A stretch of DNA of 64,000 nt from Octopus sinensis (lineage: Eukaryota). Below are positions 7,843-52,087 of the stretch, piece after piece. Under the pieces are notes generated by a model. The model worked only from the letters and a program-made list of their open reading frames with translations, was not told where the DNA came from and ran no database searches. The first letter of the stretch is position 1. Every line of letters begins with the position of its first letter. A program made the position numbers and the translations under genes. Where the stretch lies: positions 29,636,001-29,700,000 of the forward strand of contig NC_043010.1 of assembly GCF_006345805.1 (NCBI RefSeq). Direction: 5' to 3'.

Positions 7843-10281
7843 ATGCAACCTGCTGCTACCAACTTAAAGGTTCCTGCACCCGGCAGCACATTCACACATT
7901 CAAATGACTTCAAAAACAACAGCGGTAGTGAAAGTGATGATGATAGTATTGATGGCAATACTGATGGTGTTAGTAATGGCAGTGGTGCTCCTGGTAGTGG
8001 TGGTGGTGACGGTGGTGGTGGCGGTGGTGGTGGTGGTGGTGATGGTGGTAGTGGTGTTGTTGATGGTACTGGTGATAGTAGTGTTACTGGTGGTAATGGC
8101 AGTGGTGGTGGTGATGCTGGTGGTGGTGGTGGTGGTGGTGGTGGTAGTAGTGGCAACGGTAGTGGCAGTGGAGTTGGTGATGCTGATGCTGCTGCTGCTG
8201 CTGGGCCATCTCCAACTATCTCACCCCCTACAATTTCCAGCCCTCCTAATTTGCAACCTGGTGCACCTACTTCTCCACAGAACAGTCACTCTTCCTCATC
8301 ATTATCACCTAGCAATAGAGACAGTAGCCCTAGCAGCAATCCCAAAGTCATGTACTCCATGCCATCAATGTATTCCTCAGTAGGAGCATCTATGCCAATG
8401 GGATTAAACAACAACCAACATCAGCTGCTCAACAGCTTCTTCAACCAGGATTTCTACTCTGGCCAGTCTCAGTCAGGAGCCACGTGTTCTTCCACTTCCT
8501 CTATGCTCGGTTTACCAACAGGCATGATCTATCCATCTGAACACTACACTAAATGTTATCGTCGGAGTTTCAATGAACGGAAGCCTTACAAATGTGAAGT
8601 TTGTCGGAAAGGTTTCTCACGGAGGGTAAACCTAAACAATCACGAAAAAGCCCCAACAGGGGAAAAGCACTTTTATTGTGAATATTGTAAAAAAGCATTT
8701 GCACAGAGGGCTCACTTAAAAACTCATGAATTAACCCATACTGGAATTAAACCTTACACCTGTTCCTATTGTGGCAAGATGTTTGCACAGAGAGCCAACT
8801 TTGATAACCATCGGAGAATACACACGGGGGAAAAGCCATACCACTGCAATTTCTGTGAGAAGTCTTTCTCACAGCAAACCAACCTAGACAACCATGAACG
8901 AACACACACAGGATTGAAACCTTACCGCTGTGAATTCTGCTCGAAATCTTTTTCTCAACGTACTAACTTAGATAACCACAAACGTATCCATACCGGTGAT
9001 TTGTTTCGTTGCTCGTTTTGTTCAAAACCGTTTACACAGCAGATAAATCTACGTAACCATGAACGTATTCATACCGGCGAGCGACCGTATGCATGTTCTT
9101 ACTGCCCTAAAGCGTTCTGCCAACAGACAGAACTTAAGAACCATGAACGCACACATACAGGCGAGAAACCATTTATCTGCTCTATTTGTATGAAAGCATT
9201 TAGTCAGCAAGGTAACCTGAAAATACACATGCGAATACACACAGGGGAAAAGCCATTTGTGTGTGATATCTGCTCCAAAGCATTTAGCCAACGTACTAAT
9301 CTGGACAATCATAGACGTATTCACACAGGAGATATGTTTAGATGTAGCTTCTGCTCGAAAGAGTTCAGCCAACGTGTGAACCTGCGTAATCATGAACGCA
9401 TTCACACAGGGGAGAAGCCATTTAATTGCTCTGTGTGTTCAAAGTCATTTAGCCAACAGGGAAACCTCAAGAACCACTTGAGGACACACTCTGGTGAGAA
9501 ACCTTACAGCTGTGAACTATGTGGGAAATGTTTTGCTCAGCGGACCACATTAGATAATCATTTACGAAGTCATGCCCTTGCTGCAGCAAAGCAACAAGCT
9601 GCTAGAGCTGTTCCAAACAATTCACTTGTAACAAATACTACCAATCCTATCAACAACAACAACAGCAGTAGTAGTGGTGGTGTTGGGGTTGGTGTTGGTG
9701 TTGGTACCAATAATGCCAGTAATAATAACAACAGCAGTAATACCGCCAACCACAGTCGTTCTAATGCAAACCATCCCCATGGCAACCATGGCCCTCCAGA
9801 TAGCCAAGCTTTTAACAAGTCCTTCAACTGTGATATCATTGTTCCAACACCTCCTATATCTAACCGGGGTCTGTCTGGGATGGGCGAAAACTCCAACTAC
9901 AACCACAGCACAGGGGGAAATCATAATAAAAACAGCCTTAAGAGTTCCGACACCAACCAATCACAACCATTGAGCCATCCTCATCACCAATACTCCTCTC
10001 CCCACTTCCTCTCACACTCCACACACCCACTGCGTTCACATATAGATGATGACCGCAATCTGCGGGAGTCACAAAGTGGGGGATTCCGGCTGCAGCCACC
10101 TGCTGTGTCCTCCTCATGGTTAAACTCTGCCTACTTGCAGGAGATGCCTGCAAACTGGGAAAGTAACTACTTGTGGTCAAGAGGTTTTCCTATTGCCCCG
10201 ATATCATCCAGTGGTTGGAATAATGTCACAGCTGGCCTCTCATGTGGGAGGAAACTGAACAGATCTAGAGATCTTTGCTGA
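7843..10281 (+). CDS. C2H2 zinc-finger protein (ZNF-A), 812 aa. Gly/Ser/Asp-rich N-terminus, 12 tandem fingers (8587-9573, finger 1 lacking its last His), Asn/His-rich spacer, C-terminal WSRGFP motif
   Basis: Uninterrupted ORF with repeated C-x2-C-x12-H-x3-H and TGEKP-type linkers; upstream splice acceptor; no KRAB, SCAN, BTB or ZAD domain recognised. Confidence 0.95.
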   Translation: MQPAATNLKVPAPGSTFTHSNDFKNNSGSESDDDSIDGNTDGVSNGSGAPGSGGGDGGGGGGGGGGDGGSGVVDGTGDSSVTGGNGSGGGDAGGGGGGGGGSSGNGSGSGVGDADAAAAAGPSPTISPPTISSPPNLQPGAPTSPQNSHSSSSLSPSNRDSSPSSNPKVMYSMPSMYSSVGASMPMGLNNNQHQLLNSFFNQDFYSGQSQSGATCSSTSSMLGLPTGMIYPSEHYTKCYRRSFNERKPYKCEVCRKGFSRRVNLNNHEKAPTGEKHFYCEYCKKAFAQRAHLKTHELTHTGIKPYTCSYCGKMFAQRANFDNHRRIHTGEKPYHCNFCEKSFSQQTNLDNHERTHTGLKPYRCEFCSKSFSQRTNLDNHKRIHTGDLFRCSFCSKPFTQQINLRNHERIHTGERPYACSYCPKAFCQQTELKNHERTHTGEKPFICSICMKAFSQQGNLKIHMRIHTGEKPFVCDICSKAFSQRTNLDNHRRIHTGDMFRCSFCSKEFSQRVNLRNHERIHTGEKPFNCSVCSKSFSQQGNLKNHLRTHSGEKPYSCELCGKCFAQRTTLDNHLRSHALAAAKQQAARAVPNNSLVTNTTNPINNNNSSSSGGVGVGVGVGTNNASNNNNSSNTANHSRSNANHPHGNHGPPDSQAFNKSFNCDIIVPTPPISNRGLSGMGENSNYNHSTGGNHNKNSLKSSDTNQSQPLSHPHHQYSSPHFLSHSTHPLRSHIDDDRNLRESQSGGFRLQPPAVSSSWLNSAYLQEMPANWESNYLWSRGFPIAPISSSGWNNVTAGLSCGRKLNRSRDLC

Positions 10282-45535: not shown

Positions 45536-46847
45536 AATTACTGATTTACCAATAATGTCATCATCACTTAATTGAAGAACATTTAAAGTATATTATTTTT
45601 CTAAAACTTGGTAGAGTAACTGTAATTTCTCAAAACAGAATTACATCTCTGAGACTAAATCTATAAGTTTGACATTCCTGGATTCCCTTTGTTGAATATT
45701 TATTTTGATCCATTTCTATGGGTTTTTCTGTCACATTTAACCCTTCTGATGTCAACCCACCTGATACTACCCCTGGCTCTGTAGTACAAATCTTGTTTTC
45801 AAAATGTCTGAATTAAAATTTTCCACCAAAACTTAGTCTTAATTTAAGTTCCTAACACTAGTTTAATAATAACAAAGTTATTTTACAAAATTGTTTATGG
45901 TAACAAAAAAGTTAAATCTGTGGATTGTACTAGCTACTGCAGGACTCAGATTTCTTGGATTTAGACAACTTTCTTGAATATTCATGCAGTACACTTCATG
46001 TAATATTGTAAAGACCCATAACTGACTTAAATGACTCTTGGCAACTAAAAATATGGGTTGTGCTTTTCATGACACCCTTTATCTAATAAATATATAGAAT
46101 TTCCTTCTTTTCCAGACATGCAGCACCAAACTATGACACTGCTACTACCATATTTAGCTACTGGAATTATATGTTTTGAGTATACAGTCAACCACCAGAG
46201 TTGATTTCAGCTCATCTGTCTACAAGATTTTAGACAGCCTGGCAATATCCAATTCTAATACATTTGACTTAATGATTCTGAGTTCAAATTCTGCTAGGCT
46301 CAACTTTGCTTTGCATCCTTTCGAGGTCAATTAAATACACAGCAATAGGGTACTAGGATTGATGTAATCAACTATACCTGTCCCATAAAATTTCAGACCT
46401 TATGCCTATAGTAGAAAGACATATAATATATATTATAGCATAGTTATTAAAATGCAATATTGAGTACTAAAATTATAATATATTATCTAGAACGCTTGTA
46501 AATTAAATAGTTTTTTTTTTGTTTGTAGCTTCATCATTTCTGCCAGCACAGTAATTAAAAATTCTCATGCTTAAACTTAATCCATTTAAAAGATCAAAAG
46601 TTCTGTTTAATCATGGATCATTTGATTTATAATTGATTACATAAATACACTTCAATAATATTTAGGTATTAGTGAATTAAGTAATGCCACCATTGTGTGT
46701 GTACGTCTACATGTGCATGTGTGCAAGTGTATGCATATGTATGTTATTCATTCATGTATATGTCTATCTATCTATATATTGTTAGATAAATAGGTATATA
46801 AGATATAATTTACAGCATACATGTGTACAGTTAAAAATATATCCATA

Positions 46848-46881
<34 letters not shown>

Positions 46882-47002
46882 AATGCAAACATTGGACATA
46901 CACACATATAAGTATATATGTAATTATGTCCAAATGTATGTTTATATATACATGCTTGTGTTTGTGTATGTGTGTGTGTGTGTGTGTGTTTATATATATG
47001 TG

Positions 47003-47034
<32 letters not shown>

Positions 47035-47070
47035 ATATAATATATATATATATCAATCAGTTTTTTTTGT

Positions 47071-47309
47071 TTATAAAAACATAAAAATGGAGAAGAAGCA
47101 CACTGTAAGAAGTAGAGTAATCTATATTTATCATTGGTGAAGGCCTGTTTACCTTAGGATTCTTGCCATGAGTATCCTTATGGCATAACATCAGACCCTA
47201 ATACTTGTTGGCCTATAGCCTCTTTATTATAGAATTAGGGTCTGATAATACACCATAAGGATATTCTTTATGGCAAGAAACCCAGAGTAACAGGCCTTCA
47301 CCAGTGATA
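47071..47309. mobile_element. Older palindromic element (arms 47129-47202 and 47234-47309) with a one-sided tail; probably the same Penelope-derived class
   Basis: Imperfect inverted arms; the tail contains tagagtaa like the 40 kb element; the right arm has CTGATAA...ccataa/ttatgg...GAAAC-ccaga-GTA. Confidence 0.6.
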
Positions 47310-47557
47310 TATATATATATACATAAGTCATCTAAACGTTCATAAATCAGGAAAAAGATGCACTCATATATCTGTGAATAGAGTGGGTATATTAATTATC
47401 TGAAGTGTGCAGTATTATGGTGACAATAGAGAGCAGTCACCATACTTCATTCCCTATCGGATTGTTACCTAATACTCCAGTGTACCACTTGCATGAAACC
47501 AATTGGTAAGATTAGCTGTAATGGATGTAAAATACTGTACACTTTGGATAAATATAC

Positions 47558-47588
<31 letters not shown>

Positions 47589-47685
47589 AATATATATATG
47601 CAGATAGATAGATAGATAGATGTGTGTTTATACATATATACAATATATATGTGTATGCATATATGCGCATATATATATATATTCT

Positions 47686-47915
47686 GGCGGCGAGCTGGCA
47701 GAAACGTTAGCACGCCGGGCGAAATGCGTAGCCGTATTTCGTCTGCCGCTACGTTATGGGCTCAAATTCCGCCGAGGTCGACTTTGCCTTTCATCCTTTC
47801 GGGGTCGATAAATTAAGTACCAGTTATGCACTGGGGTCGATATAATCAACTTAATCCGTTTGTCTGTCCTTGTTTGTCCCCTCTGTGTTTAGCCCCTTGT
47901 GGGTAGTAAAGAAAT
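47686..47915 (+). mobile_element. Family A SINE, youngest-looking full-length copy
   Basis: CpG-rich intact head ggcggcgagctggcagaaacgttagcacgccgggcg through the 3' end gggtagtaaagaaata. Confidence 0.92.
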
Positions 47916-48174
47916 ATATATATATATATTCTTTTACTTGTTTCAGTCATTTGACTGCGGCCATGTTGGAGCATCACCTTTAGTTGAACAAATCGACCGC
48001 CCAGAACTTATTCTTTCTGAGCCTAGTACTTATTTTATCAGTCTGTTTTGCCGAACCACTAAGTTACGGAGATGCACCAACATTGGTTGTCAAGCAATGG
48101 TGGGGGAACAAACACAGACACACAAATATATATATATATATATATACACACACATATATATATATGTATGTATG

Positions 48175-49044
48175 TAGTTGAAATTTACAGGAAAACAGAA
48201 GATGAAGACAGGTGTATAAGCAACAAGCAGGTGTATTAGTTTGACGCACAGGAAGATGAGAATGTCTTTTACATTTTGAACCTACGCTCTTCAGCAGAAA
48301 GAAACAAGAAGAAATAAACAGAGAGAAGAAAAAGACTTGTGGAGTTGGCGGTCAATCATAGTAACAGGTTGGACAAAGGTAGTTAGACAGAAGAGCTAGG
48401 AAGAAGGGGAGACAATAAAGTACTGGTGATCCCAAAACAAAGATGCATGTACATGTGTGTATGTGAGAGTGTATAAGTGTGTGTGTGTGGATAGGGACTG
48501 GTGACTTTGACTTGTGGATGATGGTGTGGGTGCTGAGAAGTGGCCAGTGCTAGTGTGTGTGGATGGAAGGGGTATCAATGAAGGGAGAAGGAGGGTAGGA
48601 GTGAAGAGAGGAAGTAAGTGTTAGATGAAGAGAAGAGAGGAGGGGAGGGAAGTTGAGCCCATGTGGTGCAAAGGAGTGAAGAGAGAAGGTTAATTCCAGT
48701 TCATGGCGAGACAGGAGTCCAGATGGCCCGTGCAAAGACAATCTCAACACAGACATGTGTTGTGATGAATGACTGGTAGAGCAGAAATGGTGCAAGACCG
48801 GGGTGTCATTGCCAAGTCTAATGTCTCAGGTGCTCCATGAACTGATCAGCCAAACAGCATCCCATTTGACTGATGTACAGCGAGGGACAGAAAGAGCAGG
48901 AGCTGCAATAAATGATGTTCTAAGAAGTGCAGGTAAGGGAGCCAGTGATATGATAGGGACAATGGTGGGTGCCTGTGAGGATGTTGGTGTTGGAGAGGTA
49001 GGGGCAAGTGCAGCAGTGTGGGAACGAGCCAGGTTGGGAGGTAC
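48175..49044 (-). pseudogene. Penelope-like element remnant: Cys-rich linker, GIY-YIG endonuclease and 3' pLTR
   Basis: The minus strand translates PGSFPHCCTCPYL...ITGSLTCTS*NIIYCSSCSFCPSLYISQMG...FMEHLR, and further on LELTFSLHSFAPHGLN. Degenerate hammerhead-like CTGAAGA...AAAAT-GTA at about 48264-48301. Confidence 0.85.
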
Positions 49045-49376
49045 AACAGGCTTCTTTCAGTTTCTTTCTACTAAATCCACTCACAAGGCTTTAGTTGGCC
49101 CGAGGTTAAAGTAGAGGACACTTGCCCAAGGTGCCACACAGTGGAACTGAACCCAGAACCATATGGTTGGGAAGCAAGTTTCTTACAACACAGCCAAACC
49201 TACACCTCTAGAGAAGCCTTAAGCCAACAGGTTTTGGGATCTAATATGAGATAAAGCTAAACCCTTTACGGACATGAAACCTAAGGTAATCCCATAAACT
49301 GGCCTTATCTAACTTTAATATATACTGTTCTATAGCTTAGTGTGCTTCATTTTTCAGATTTATATTTTTACAGATG

Positions 49377-49408
<32 letters not shown>

Positions 49409-49913
49409 ACATATATAAAGATTTATATATATATATATCTTATCATCATCATCATTTAACATCCATTATCCACGCTGGCATAAGTTACATATATATATAT
49501 AAGCTTTATTTCTAAATTATACTGCACCTTATACCTAGTCAAAAGAAATTATAATTTCTAAATTATATAAATACATCTTATACATTAGACATAAATACAA
49601 TATATATATACATATGTGTGATTGTGAGTGAGTGTAAAACATTAACATTGTCTTTGTATGTGTATATATACACACACATATATTTACACACATTTGAGGC
49701 CAAACATGCGTGTGTGTGTGTGTGTGTGCAATGCATTCACACGTATGAGTTGATATCTTACCACATTCTAAAAATTCATTTAAAAAATCAAGTATGAATT
49801 TGAAAAAGAATCTTTGCAACATGTCTGATATTGGGGATCCTTTGATGGTGTTTCTTGTAAAAGATAGAGTGGAGCAATCTGTATAAGTGATGAAACAATC
49901 TCTATGGTTTCTA

Positions 49914-50098: not shown

Positions 50099-52087
50099 CT
50101 AAGAACTGCTGTTTTGCCGAAGTTTCGAAGAAATGCTTTTCGAAGCAGCTTTTTGGCAACATTTAGGTTCCTTCTGCTTATTCTGTTTCAATTCTTGAGA
50201 TGCAGATGTTGAACAGTTTTTAGTAAGTGGACCCCATCTAGGTGATGCCATGGGAAAGCCTCTTGACCAACCATAGTGACTACCCCAGCCTGGAGACATT
50301 GGCGGCAAATAGGTGGAACCCATCAGAGAAGGAATGGCTGCTGGTTGAAACTTCATAGCTGATGAAGACATCTGCATCTGTCGATGTAGATCACTCGCAG
50401 CACCAACATTGCTAGCATCCGGTCCATGCAGGAGCCATAAGCTGTCAAGCCCTGAATCAAGATGTGAACTTGGTGATGTGATACTATTCTCATTGCAAGA
50501 AGATGTTGGCAAAGAACTTGTACCAGAAGATGCCTCTTTCTGAAGTTGTTGCTGTTGTTGTATGCATGCATTCATCCATTTTGAAAACATGCTTGTATTC
50601 TGCTGTTTGCTTGCCATAGACCGTGGGTCTTGCTGAAAAAATATTTCTTCATCCATTGAGCCCTGAACACACACATGGTTATTGAACTGTGACTTCTGTG
50701 AAAACTGTTTTTTGCAAATGCAGCAGAGCAACGGATTTTTATCAGAACTGTTTGATGGTGCTGTAGGCATCTCCACAGCAACACTATTGTTGTTGTTGTT
50801 AGTGTTGTTATTATTGTTGTTGGTGGTGGTAGTATTAGTTTTATCATGATGTTGTGAGCTTGCTTTTGAAGAACAGTAACCATTTTGGTTGTTTGTGGGA
50901 GACTGTTCACTTCTAGTGACTTCCTGAAGAGAATCTATCATATTTGATTTTTTATCCTCATTCTGACATTGCTGTTCTTTCAACAATTTCAAACCATGGG
51001 TTCGCTCATGATTCTTTAAAGTGCTTCTCTGTGAGAAAGCTTTCCCGCAAGTTAAACATACAAATGGTTTTTCCCCAGAGTGAATCCGTTCGTGATTTCG
51101 TAAATTTGTCACTTGACTAAATGCTTTCCCACAGACCAAGCACACATAAGGCTTTTCCCCCGAATGTGTTCGTAAATGGTTTTTCAAATCTGTTCGCTGG
51201 GCAAATGCTTTAGGGCAAACTGTACATGCAAATGGTTTTTCTCTTGTGTGGACGCGTAAATGGTTTCTTAGATCTGTTCGTTGGCTAAATGCTTTTGGGC
51301 ACATCATACAGTGAAAAGGCTTCTCTTTGGTGTGAACCCGTTCATGATTGCGTAAATTTGTCAACTGGCTAAATGCCTTAAGGCAGTAGGAACACGTATA
51401 TGGCTTGATGCCTGTGTGTACCCTTTCGTGACAAGTGAGTTCTGCCTGCTGGGCAAAGGACTTCAGACATACAGAGCAAGTATAAGGTTTTATCCCTGTG
51501 TGAATTCTCTCGTGATTTCGAAGATTGGTCAGCTGGCTGAACGCTTTTGAACACGTTAAGCATTTGTAAGGCCTCTCGCCAGAGTGTATTCGCTCATGAT
51601 TACGTAAGTTCGTGCGCTGGCTGAAGGATTTGGAACACACCAAGCAAATGTATGGCCTCTCCCCACTGTGTATACGTTCGTGATTGCGCAGGTTTGTACG
51701 TTGACTAAATGCCTTTAAGCATACAAGACACACATAGGGTTTCTGACCAGTATGAGTCCTCTCGTGATTTTGGAGGTTCACTTTCTGCGCAAATACTTTT
51801 TCACACGTATTACATTTAAATAATTTAGGTGGAGTGTAAGGCATATTACTGCTTTGTCCACCCACAATCTGATTTGGTGCTTGGCTGGAATTTAGCTTGG
51901 TGTTCATTTTCATAGCTGATGTTTTACAGTTTTGAGAAGTTGACAGGACTGATTCTGAGGAAACCATAGTTGGACTTGAATGAATCAGTTTTGAAGTATC
52001 CTGTTTTAAGTTGGCCGGGGACAATGCAAATGTTCGATTGCAGAAATTTCTTTGGGTAGGCACCCCATATATTGGGAAAGGATACAT
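50099..52087 (-). CDS. C2H2 zinc-finger protein (ZNF-B), 662 aa. 10 tandem fingers (51820-50996), poly-T/N spacer, isolated C-x2-C-x12-H-x-C finger, poly-Q, C-terminal WSRGFP motif
   Basis: Uninterrupted ORF with canonical fingers and linkers; splice acceptor 9 nt upstream of the ATG. Confidence 0.95.
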   Translation of the reverse strand: MYPFPIYGVPTQRNFCNRTFALSPANLKQDTSKLIHSSPTMVSSESVLSTSQNCKTSAMKMNTKLNSSQAPNQIVGGQSSNMPYTPPKLFKCNTCEKVFAQKVNLQNHERTHTGQKPYVCLVCLKAFSQRTNLRNHERIHSGERPYICLVCSKSFSQRTNLRNHERIHSGERPYKCLTCSKAFSQLTNLRNHERIHTGIKPYTCSVCLKSFAQQAELTCHERVHTGIKPYTCSYCLKAFSQLTNLRNHERVHTKEKPFHCMMCPKAFSQRTDLRNHLRVHTREKPFACTVCPKAFAQRTDLKNHLRTHSGEKPYVCLVCGKAFSQVTNLRNHERIHSGEKPFVCLTCGKAFSQRSTLKNHERTHGLKLLKEQQCQNEDKKSNMIDSLQEVTRSEQSPTNNQNGYCSSKASSQHHDKTNTTTTNNNNNNTNNNNNSVAVEMPTAPSNSSDKNPLLCCICKKQFSQKSQFNNHVCVQGSMDEEIFFQQDPRSMASKQQNTSMFSKWMNACIQQQQQLQKEASSGTSSLPTSSCNENSITSPSSHLDSGLDSLWLLHGPDASNVGAASDLHRQMQMSSSAMKFQPAAIPSLMGSTYLPPMSPGWGSHYGWSRGFPMASPRWGPLTKNCSTSASQELKQNKQKEPKCCQKAASKSISSKLRQNSSS

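What the first reader, a model, noticed from the sequence alone, without database searches (positions are those of the whole stretch)
50234..50356. ZNF-B copy of the WSRGFP motif
Seen: MKFQPAAIPSLMGSTYLPPMSPGWGSHYGWSRGFPMASPRW lies 46 codons before the stop, at a position equivalent to that in ZNF-A. The DNA core tggtcaagagg is identical in both genes. ZNF-B also has an upstream FSKWMNA segment resembling SSWLNS in ZNF-A. This second copy is what makes the motif visible.
Basis: partly seen in the sequence, partly recalled or inferred. Interest (0 to 1): 0.8.

Follow-up and report, generated by a model that had tools for sequence, protein, structure and literature searches.

The report
Cephalopod zinc-finger family tail motif
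The flagged stretch is a real, conserved, apparently undescribed peptide motif near the C-terminus of a small octopus/cuttlefish family of multi-zinc-finger proteins; it is probably a docking site for a shared partner protein, which is of moderate interest.

Summary
Confirmed. Window 50234-50356 (-) encodes exactly the peptide quoted. It is residues 578-618 of a 662-aa, 10-finger C2H2 protein (ZNF-B), and 44 codons follow it, not 46. It matches the tail of ZNF-A (7843-10281 +): tail-only BLASTP E 2e-8.

The window is Octopus sinensis. The motif is one copy of a ~60-residue C-terminal signature: RLQ..SWM.S.YL..M.QSWENNYLWSRGFPMpP...S.W.N. Its invariant core is W-x3-Y-x-W-x-R-x-[FY]-P. The signature marks a family with at least five paralogues per Octopus genome, all on one chromosome, plus members in Argonauta and Sepia. 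Every full-length member also starts with MY[PST]xxPxY.

A HMMER scan of 1.84 billion representatives found no named non-cephalopod member. Pfam, PDB sequences and the literature have nothing on it.

Selection acts on the protein. Ten of 16 shared degenerate residues use different codons in A and B. O. sinensis vs O. bimaculoides ZNF-B has 31 synonymous and 4 non-synonymous differences, none in the motif. In octopus-versus-cuttlefish-like pairs the core is 60-80% identical against 31-42% for the linker.

AlphaFold predicts no fold there. The best reading is a disordered docking motif that acts as the family's effector module; the partner is unknown. The FSKWMNA/SSWLNS equivalence is weak, and dimerisation is untested.

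The parts
50099..52087 (-). ZNF-B coding ORF, 662 aa plus stop, a single uninterrupted ORF. It is identical to a protein in the public collection (P0001) that is encoded identically in O. sinensis and O. vulgaris. The O. bimaculoides orthologue is XP_014775840 'zinc finger protein 79'.
50183..50362 (-). ZNF-B copy of the family C-terminal motif domain (aa 576-635), as delimited by the family profile at 78 bits.
50234..50287 (-). Most conserved core of the ZNF-B motif (aa 601-618): W-G-S-H-Y-G-W-S-R-G-F-P-M-A-S-P-R-W, which follows the family pattern W-x3-Y-x-W-x-R-x-[FY]-P. It is 60% identical to the cuttlefish-like orthologue, against 31% for the linker.
50534..50590 (-). FSKWMNACIQQQQQLQ segment (aa 500-518). 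It is an island specific to the ZNF-B lineage, conserved in orthologue P0007 (ISKWMINCVQQQKQ). AlphaFold predicts an alpha-helix here at block pLDDT 62 and 50. It matches the first half of the motif profile only weakly (4.6 bits).
50666..50734 (-). Isolated eleventh finger of ZNF-B (aa 452-474), C-x2-C-x12-H-x-C. It is 57% identical in P0007 and predicted as beta-beta-alpha at pLDDT 73-78.
50996..51823 (-). ZNF-B array of 10 tandem C2H2 fingers (aa 89-364). It is 100% identical to O. bimaculoides and 90% identical to P0007.
52043..52087 (-). ZNF-B N-terminal family motif MYPFPIYGVPTQRNF. The family pattern is M-[YF]-[PST]-x-x-[PQ]-x-[YF]...Q..F, and it starts every full-length family member.
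7843..10281 (+). ZNF-A ORF, 812 aa plus stop. The conserved family start MYSMPSMY is at codon 170 (8350). The 169 codons upstream are Gly/Ser-rich low complexity and may not be coding.
10081..10254 (+). ZNF-A copy of the C-terminal motif domain (aa 747-804, 95.5 bits). WSRGFP lies at 10174-10191.

Best explanation
The segment is ZNF-B's copy of a family-defining C-terminal peptide motif of about 60 residues. Its core is W-x3-Y-x-W-x-R-x-[FY]-P-x2-P. It belongs to a small coleoid-cephalopod family of poly-C2H2 zinc-finger proteins, presumably transcription factors, whose members also share an N-terminal MYPxxPxY motif.

Shown: the motif is translated sequence kept by purifying selection since before the octopus/cuttlefish split. 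It sits in a tail that is otherwise fast-evolving. It has no predicted fold, and it has no counterpart in Pfam, in PDB sequences or in the searched literature.

Inferred: it works as a disordered, aromatic-rich docking peptide (a short-linear-motif cluster). Through it, paralogues that differ in their DNA-binding finger arrays recruit one common partner, most likely a transcriptional co-regulator. That would make it the family's effector module, playing the role that KRAB, SNAG or WRPW play elsewhere. The partner's identity is unknown.
For: Real and non-random.

Family: a HMMER scan of 1.84e9 representative proteins with the two window tails returned 11 hits. Nine of these, besides ZNF-B itself, carry the motif at E 4.5e-14 to 8e-5. 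Every named one is a cephalopod: Octopus vulgaris, sinensis and bimaculoides, Argonauta hians, and Acanthosepion/Sepia pharaonis. One unnamed contig comes from a Sepia esculenta RNA-seq run.

Motif pattern: W, W and R are invariant, and Q, L, Y and P are at least 90% conserved across 13 sequences. The W-x3-[YF]-x-W-x-R-x-[FY]-[PA] pattern is present in 12 of 13 lineages.

Genomic arrangement: at least five Octopus paralogues lie on one chromosome.

Protein-level selection: between A and B, 20/41 residues are identical, yet 10 of the 16 identical degenerate residues use different codons. O. sinensis vs O. bimaculoides ZNF-B has 31 synonymous and 4 non-synonymous differences (omega 0.03). In three octopus vs cuttlefish-like orthologue pairs the 20-aa core is 60, 70 and 80% identical, against 31, 42 and 41% for the linker.

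Disorder: AlphaFold on the tail alignment gives pLDDT 57.6 and no secondary structure. In the full-length model the fingers score 75-80 and the motif about 30.

No known domain: Pfam finds only fingers, PDB sequences give nothing, and no paper contains the motif strings.
Against: No partner was identified and no binding was tested, so the docking function is inference from anatomy alone.

The AlphaFold alignments were shallow (12-13 sequences), so 'disordered' could be an under-prediction.

At short evolutionary range (Octopus species) the whole tail is constrained, not only the motif.

In the ZNF-B lineage the first half of the motif is poorly conserved, at 19%.

In two cuttlefish-type transcripts the tail is out of frame with the finger array. 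This would be odd for an obligatory effector module.

The word-index protein searches with the tail alone failed even to find ZNF-B itself. The claim of restricted taxonomic range therefore rests on one HMMER scan made with a two-sequence profile.
Confidence: 0.55

Rival explanations
1. Tail-tail association. The aromatic motif mediates homo- or heterotypic binding between family members, either as dimers or as multivalent aromatic 'sticker' contacts, so that paralogues bind DNA cooperatively.
For: All paralogues share the motif while their finger arrays differ. The Trp/Tyr/Phe-rich composition in a disordered tail fits sticker-type self-association. The paralogues are genomically linked. Co-expression was not tested.
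Against: No structure or interface is predicted. There is no coiled coil, no zinc-binding dimerisation fold such as ZAD, and no Ikaros-type dimerisation fingers. Nothing was tested directly.
Confidence: 0.17
2. Trafficking or stability signal. On this reading the motif is recognised by a transport receptor or a ubiquitin ligase rather than a co-regulator. The R-x2-P-[MIV] element followed by a basic KQxKQ patch could act as a PY-NLS-like signal, or the motif could be a degron.
For: R-G-F-P-[MIV] loosely resembles the R-x2-5-P-Y/hydrophobic end of PY-type nuclear localisation signals (my own knowledge; a pattern-level lead only). A conserved basic KQ.KQ patch and a conserved Cys follow the core in most paralogues. 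The context is disordered.
Against: Tyr does not follow the Pro. Poly-finger arrays usually carry their own nuclear targeting. ZNF-B lacks the conserved Cys/KQ.KQ spacing seen in the others.
Confidence: 0.15
3. Not a functional protein motif: the similarity arises by chance, by recent gene conversion, or from a shared DNA/RNA-level element or repeat that happens to lie in both tails.
For: The 11 nt are identical in both genes.
Against: Synonymous sites have diverged: 10 of 16 identical degenerate residues use different codons, and nucleotide identity is 60%. The motif is present in at least six lineages across octopods and cuttlefish, with E values down to 4.5e-14. There are no non-synonymous changes in the motif between Octopus species. 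Rfam finds nothing in the window. The profile hits only the two ORFs in the window.
Confidence: 0.01

Closest known systems
KRAB domain of tetrapod KRAB-zinc-finger proteins (Pfam PF01352)
   Same: It is a lineage-restricted, non-finger module shared by paralogous poly-C2H2 proteins whose finger arrays differ. It gives them a common effector function by recruiting one cofactor.
   Different: KRAB is N-terminal, about 75 residues long and recognisable by Pfam, and it has been amplified to hundreds of genes. The motif here is C-terminal with a roughly 20-residue core, has no Pfam match, and is found in only about 5-6 genes per genome. The Sepia pharaonis members that a source names 'KRAB' contain no KRAB domain.
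C-terminal WRPW/WRPY Groucho-docking peptides of Hairy/Hes and Runx factors
   Same: It is a short Trp/Arg/aromatic peptide in the disordered C-terminal tail of a DNA-binding transcription factor, conserved among paralogues, and it acts as a co-repressor dock.
   Different: The sequence here is W-[SPG]-R-x-[FY]-[PA], not W-R-P-[WY]. It lies 35-62 residues from the C-terminus rather than at the very end, and it is embedded in a longer conserved block. Groucho binding is not tested. The resemblance comes from my own knowledge and is only a lead.
ZAD (insects) and SCAN/BTB (vertebrates) domains of zinc-finger proteins
   Same: They are clade-specific accessory modules on poly-zinc-finger proteins, used for dimerisation or partner binding.
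   Different: They are folded N-terminal domains. None is detected here (Pfam), and AlphaFold predicts no fold for the motif.
W-x3-[FY] pentapeptide repeats of PEX5 (PEX14-binding)
   Same: The core contains two consecutive W-x3-[YF] units (W-E-N-N-Y and W-S-R-G-F), which is the same spacing pattern.
   Different: The match is in pattern only. PEX5 motifs form amphipathic helices in a cytosolic import receptor. Here no helix is predicted and the host is a DNA-binding finger protein. No homology is claimed.

Membership tests
Poly-C2H2 (Krueppel-type) zinc-finger proteins | Tandem C-x2-C-x12-H-x3-H fingers joined by TGEKP-type linkers (Pfam PF00096 / PF13465) | tested here: met
   ZNF-B: PF13465 E 1.6e-79, PF00096 E 1.1e-53, 10 tandem fingers. 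ZNF-A: PF13465 E 1.3e-87. AlphaFold models the fingers as beta-beta-alpha at pLDDT 75-80.
KRAB-zinc-finger proteins | KRAB A/B box (Pfam PF01352) | tested here: not met
   No PF01352 hit at E<=1 in ZNF-A, ZNF-B or their tails. No hit at E<=0.01 in seven other family members, including the two Sepia pharaonis proteins named 'KRAB'.
SCAN-, BTB/POZ- or ZAD-zinc-finger proteins | SCAN (PF02023), BTB (PF00651) or ZAD (PF07776) domain | tested here: not met
   None of these appears among the Pfam hits at E<=1 for ZNF-A and ZNF-B or at E<=0.01 for seven relatives.
WRPW/WRPY Groucho-recruiting transcription factors | W-R-P-[WY] tetrapeptide at the extreme C-terminus | tested here: not met
   Reading the 13 aligned tails shows W-[SPG]-R-x-[FY]-[PA], located 35-62 residues from the end. 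No WRPW or WRPY is present.
WRPW/WRPY Groucho-recruiting transcription factors | Binding to the Groucho/TLE WD40 domain | not testable with these tools
   Needs a binding assay or a complex prediction.
PEX5-like W-x3-[FY] motif proteins | W-x3-[FY] pentapeptide forming an amphipathic helix that binds PEX14 | tested here: inconclusive
   The spacing pattern is present twice in 12 of 13 lineages, but no helix is predicted and the protein context is unrelated.
   ZNF-B scores 78.2 bits at aa 576-635 and ZNF-A 95.5 bits at aa 747-804. Both sequences were in the profile. Independent support comes from the two-sequence profile recovering nine other members at E 4.5e-14 to 8e-5.
   ZNF-B starts MYPFPIYG. 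ZNF-A has MYSMPSMY at codon 170. All full-length relatives begin with this motif.

The most novel reading that the evidence does not exclude
The MYP.../...WSRGFP termini are a cephalopod-invented effector system. On this reading the C-terminal W-x3-Y-x-W-x-R-x-F-P peptide recruits a specific co-regulator to a set of coleoid-specific transcription factors. In some cuttlefish paralogues, access to this tail is regulated by a +1 frame change at a slippery A8 run, or by separate translation of a finger-less tail product. Either would give finger-only and finger-plus-effector isoforms.
Probability: 0.08. Interest if true: 0.65.

Novelty: new variant of a known kind. Interest (0 to 1): 0.38.

Why it matters
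Coleoid cephalopods have one of the largest C2H2 zinc-finger repertoires known. Expansions specific to coleoids, octopuses and squids are expressed mainly in nervous tissue (PMC12513265). In contrast to KRAB, SCAN and ZAD in other clades, the two papers I searched describe no accessory or effector module for these proteins.

A conserved pair of terminal motifs that defines a small, old (pre octopus/cuttlefish split), strongly constrained subfamily offers two things. It gives a concrete handle for asking which cofactors cephalopod zinc-finger proteins use. It also gives a simple sequence signature for sorting these genes into orthology groups, which finger arrays alone do poorly.

The value is moderate. 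The family is small and the function is still inferred.

Tried and rejected
1. Word-index homology searches with the tail alone returned nothing, not even ZNF-B itself. One used the two-sequence alignment and one the 13-sequence alignment. I treated this as a limit of the tool on short queries, not as evidence. The exhaustive HMMER scan and the full-length search found the relatives.

2. Pfam on the tails and on relatives gave fingers only. A PDB sequence profile search gave only a non-significant hit, BRD2 at E 1.3.

3. I did not run a structure comparison (fold search). Both models have pLDDT below 60 in the motif, so any match would be meaningless.

4. Literature: the motif strings are absent from the library. 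The two most relevant papers on cephalopod and metazoan ZNFs do not mention terminal motifs. RefSeq ids of family members are absent from the supplements held for PMC12513265.

5. ZNF-A was not found in the protein collection under any of eight possible start codons. I therefore could not fetch its close orthologues, and no short-range dN/dS is available for ZNF-A.

6. P0129, a 2150-aa hit at E 7e-5, has no motif and is a spurious match.

7. A very short intron as an explanation for the frame change in L014: the one donor-like site (GTACGT) and the nearby AG dinucleotides, which I read by eye, do not restore the frame. This remains unresolved.

8. Rfam and tRNA scans of the window found nothing.

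Full report
**What is at the coordinates.** Window 50234-50356 on the minus strand translates to MKFQPAAIPSLMGSTYLPPMSPGWGSHYGWSRGFPMASPRW.
- It is residues 578-618 of an uninterrupted 662-codon ORF, 50099..52087 (-). I call this ORF ZNF-B.
- 44 codons follow the segment before the stop.
- ZNF-B has a 10-finger C2H2 array (aa 89-364) and nothing else known to Pfam.
- 'ZNF-A' is the 812-codon ORF 7843..10281 (+), about 40 kb away on the other strand.
- The window is 100% identical over 3,989 bp to Octopus sinensis CM016872.1 and 98.9% identical to O. vulgaris OX597827.1.

**Is the resemblance more than chance?** Yes.
- With the finger arrays removed, the two tails align at BLASTP E 2e-8.
- The 11-mer TGGTCAAGAGG occurs only at the two WSRG sites in 64 kb, and in none of 100 shuffles.
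- A profile of the family tail hits only these two ORFs in a six-frame translation of the window: 106 and 96 bits, with the next hit at 6 bits.

**What it belongs to.** A full-length search with ZNF-B and an exhaustive HMMER scan of 1.84 billion representative proteins with the two tails recovered a compact set of relatives that carry the same tail.
- Where a source names them they are all coleoid cephalopods: Octopus vulgaris, sinensis and bimaculoides, Argonauta hians, and Acanthosepion (Sepia) pharaonis.
- One unnamed contig comes from a Sepia esculenta RNA-seq run.
- None of the roughly 110 vertebrate and arthropod finger proteins returned by the full-length search has the motif.
- The single non-family hit of the HMMER scan, P0129, is spurious.

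The aligned tails give the consensus RLQ-x3-I-x2-SWM-x-S-x-YL-x2-M-x-QSWENNYLWSRGFPMpP-x3-S-x-W-x-N...C..KQ.KQ.
- W, W and R are invariant, and Q, L, Y and P are at least 90% conserved.
- The core W-x3-[YF]-x-W-x-R-x-[FY]-[PA] is present in 12 of 13 lineages.

Every full-length member also begins with M-[YF]-[PST]-x2-[PQ]-x-[YF].
- ZNF-B starts MYPFPIYG.
- ZNF-A has MYSMPSMY, but only at codon 170.

The family is therefore defined by two terminal motifs flanking a variable array of 7-14 fingers.

Octopus has at least five paralogues. They are ZNF-A, ZNF-B and the groups of P0125, P0152 and P0151/P0010.
- In O. vulgaris the four whose positions were looked up (ZNF-B, P0152, P0125, P0151) all sit on one chromosome, at 34.57, 75.65, 75.77 and 78.55 Mb. 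ZNF-A lies about 40 kb from ZNF-B in the O. sinensis window.
- The same linkage is seen in O. sinensis and O. bimaculoides.
- Several groups have both octopod and cuttlefish members. The duplications therefore predate that split, and the motif was kept in every copy.

**Selection.** Between ZNF-A and ZNF-B the motif is 20/41 identical in protein but only 60% identical in DNA. Ten of the 16 identical residues with degenerate codons use different codons. Conservation is therefore at the protein level, and the identical 11-mer is largely forced (TGG) or coincidental.

ZNF-B of O. sinensis vs O. bimaculoides differs by 31 synonymous and 4 non-synonymous substitutions, omega about 0.03.
- The rest of the tail is equally constrained at this short range.

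At long range the motif stands out:

| Octopus vs cuttlefish-like pair | 20-residue core identity | Linker identity |
|---|---|---|
| ZNF-B / P0007 | 60% | 31% |
| P0151 / P0123 | 70% | 42% |
| P0125 / P0130 | 80% | 41% |

One qualification applies. In the ZNF-B lineage the first half of the motif has decayed to 19% identity (W to L, and a deletion in P0007). The second half carries the conservation.

**The FSKWMNA claim.**
- In the family alignment, ZNF-A SSWLNS pairs with ZNF-B PSLMGS inside the motif.
- FSKWMNA lies about 75 residues upstream and is conserved in P0007 (ISKWMINCVQQQKQ).
- AlphaFold predicts a helix there (aa 500-518), with block pLDDT of 62 and 50.
- It matches the first half of the motif profile at only 4.6 bits in isolation.
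- At most it is a weak partial echo of the motif's first half. It is not the in-register equivalent.

**Structure.**
- AlphaFold on a 13-sequence tail alignment gave mean pLDDT 57.6 and no secondary structure.
- In the full-length model the fingers reach 75-80 and the isolated eleventh finger (aa 452-474) 73-78. The motif region is about 30.
- With the caveat of shallow alignments, this points to an intrinsically disordered, aromatic-rich peptide rather than a folded domain.
- Pfam and PDB sequences have no match.
- The motif strings occur in no paper of the library.
- Two directly relevant papers do not discuss terminal motifs.

**Mechanism.**
- Shown: this is a translated, selectively maintained, family-defining, probably disordered C-terminal peptide on DNA-binding finger proteins.
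- Inferred: it is a docking motif through which paralogues with different DNA specificities recruit the same partner, most likely a transcriptional co-regulator. That is an effector role analogous to KRAB, SNAG or WRPW.
Chance, gene conversion and a nucleic-acid element are effectively excluded.
- The tandem W-x3-[YF] spacing and the W..R..F-P order loosely recall PEX5 pentapeptides and WRPW. These are pattern-level leads from memory, not tests. The WRPW definition is not met.

**Unexplained side observation.** In contigs from three RNA-seq runs, including Sepia esculenta, a ZNF-A-like gene has its finger ORF and its motif-bearing tail ORF in different frames, with the tail at +1. The contigs are 99.7-99.95% identical to each other, and the gene shares ZNF-A's peculiar degenerate first finger, NHEKAP.
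- The 59-nt overlap between the called genes (77 nt between the longest ORFs) contains an A8 run in all three contigs. One A fewer would fuse the two frames.
- A second, different paralogue (L014) also has the tail in the +1 frame, without a homopolymer.
- Both tail ORFs remain open for 146-156 codons and keep the motif.
- I could not tell which of four explanations applies: slippage or frameshifting, a separately translated finger-less product, a recent disabling mutation, or an assembly quirk.

**Verdict.** The motif is an undescribed family signature of moderate interest. It is a new variant of the known theme of clade-specific accessory motifs on poly-zinc-finger proteins. Its molecular function is still to be tested.

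Noticed in passing
L011:2140-2216 (also L012, L013) and L014:1472-1506: In cuttlefish-type transcripts of two family members, the motif-bearing tail ORF is in the +1 frame relative to the finger-array ORF. In the ZNF-A-like gene (three runs, one of them Sepia esculenta RNA-seq) the overlap holds an A8 run (GATGTTAAAAAAAACAG), and one A fewer would join the frames. L014 has no homopolymer; there the stop TGA is followed by G and then ATG. The tail ORFs stay open for 146-156 codons and keep the motif.
   Followed up: partly
window 7843-8349 (+): The first 169 codons of the ZNF-A ORF are a Gly/Ser/Asp-rich triplet-repeat stretch that is also open on the opposite strand. The conserved family start MYSMPSMY is at codon 170 (8350), and the Sepia ZNF-A-like transcript has no such extension. 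ZNF-A was not found in the public protein collection under any of eight start codons, so its annotated model, if one exists, differs from the ORF.
   Followed up: partly
window 8590-8670 (+), ZNF-A finger 1: ZNF-A's first finger lacks its second zinc-binding histidine: it reads NHEKAPTGEKHF instead of NHEKxHTGEKP. The same defect (NHEKAPSDEKHF) is present in the Sepia ZNF-A-like transcript L011, so the degenerate finger is old and conserved rather than a recent lesion.
   Followed up: partly
window 50666-50734 (-) and 50534-50590 (-): The ZNF-B tail has two further conserved islands that ZNF-A lacks. One is an isolated eleventh finger with C-x2-C-x12-H-x-C spacing, modelled confidently as a finger. 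The other is a Gln-rich predicted helix, FSKWMNACIQQQQQLQ. Both are conserved in the cuttlefish-like orthologue P0007.
   Followed up: partly
ZNF-A window 8587-9573 (+); relatives P0010, P0123, P0125, P0152: ZNF-A and three paralogue groups carry recurrent one-residue-shorter linkers, HTG[DEN][LM][FY]xC in place of HTGEKPYxC, 2-4 per protein. ZNF-B, P0007 and P0128 have none. This splits the family into two subtypes.
   Followed up: partly
O. vulgaris OX597827.1 (loci L005, L007, L009, L010); O. sinensis CM016872.1; O. bimaculoides CM046614.1: All family paralogues whose positions were looked up lie on a single chromosome in each Octopus species. In O. vulgaris they form three groups, at about 34.6, 75.65-75.77 and 78.55 Mb. 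The window itself is O. sinensis CM016872.1, around 29.6-29.7 Mb.
   Followed up: yes
P0121, P0127 (Acanthosepion pharaonis CAE1165441.1, CAE1144206.1): Two family members are named 'KRAB' by their source but have no KRAB domain in Pfam. The name is an annotation artefact.
   Followed up: yes
P0124 (Acanthosepion pharaonis CAE1244983.1, 301 aa): This gene model has an MY-type start, a long Ser/Pro-rich stretch and the tail motif, but no zinc finger at all. It is either a mis-modelled gene or a finger-less family member.
   Followed up: no
window 50770-50830 (-), ZNF-B aa 420-440: The poly-Asn run (AAC/AAT repeats) in the ZNF-B linker differs in length between O. sinensis and O. bimaculoides by two extra Asn. 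It is the only indel region in an otherwise 99% identical protein.
   Followed up: partly
window-wide, e.g. 46770-48250 and 49360-49730: There are dense (TA)n, (CA)n and (TATG)-type microsatellites, and overall GC is 30-45%. No other ORF of 150 aa or more exists besides the two ZNF genes and repeat-derived ORFs. Rfam found no RNA family hit and ARAGORN no tRNA gene.
   Followed up: partly
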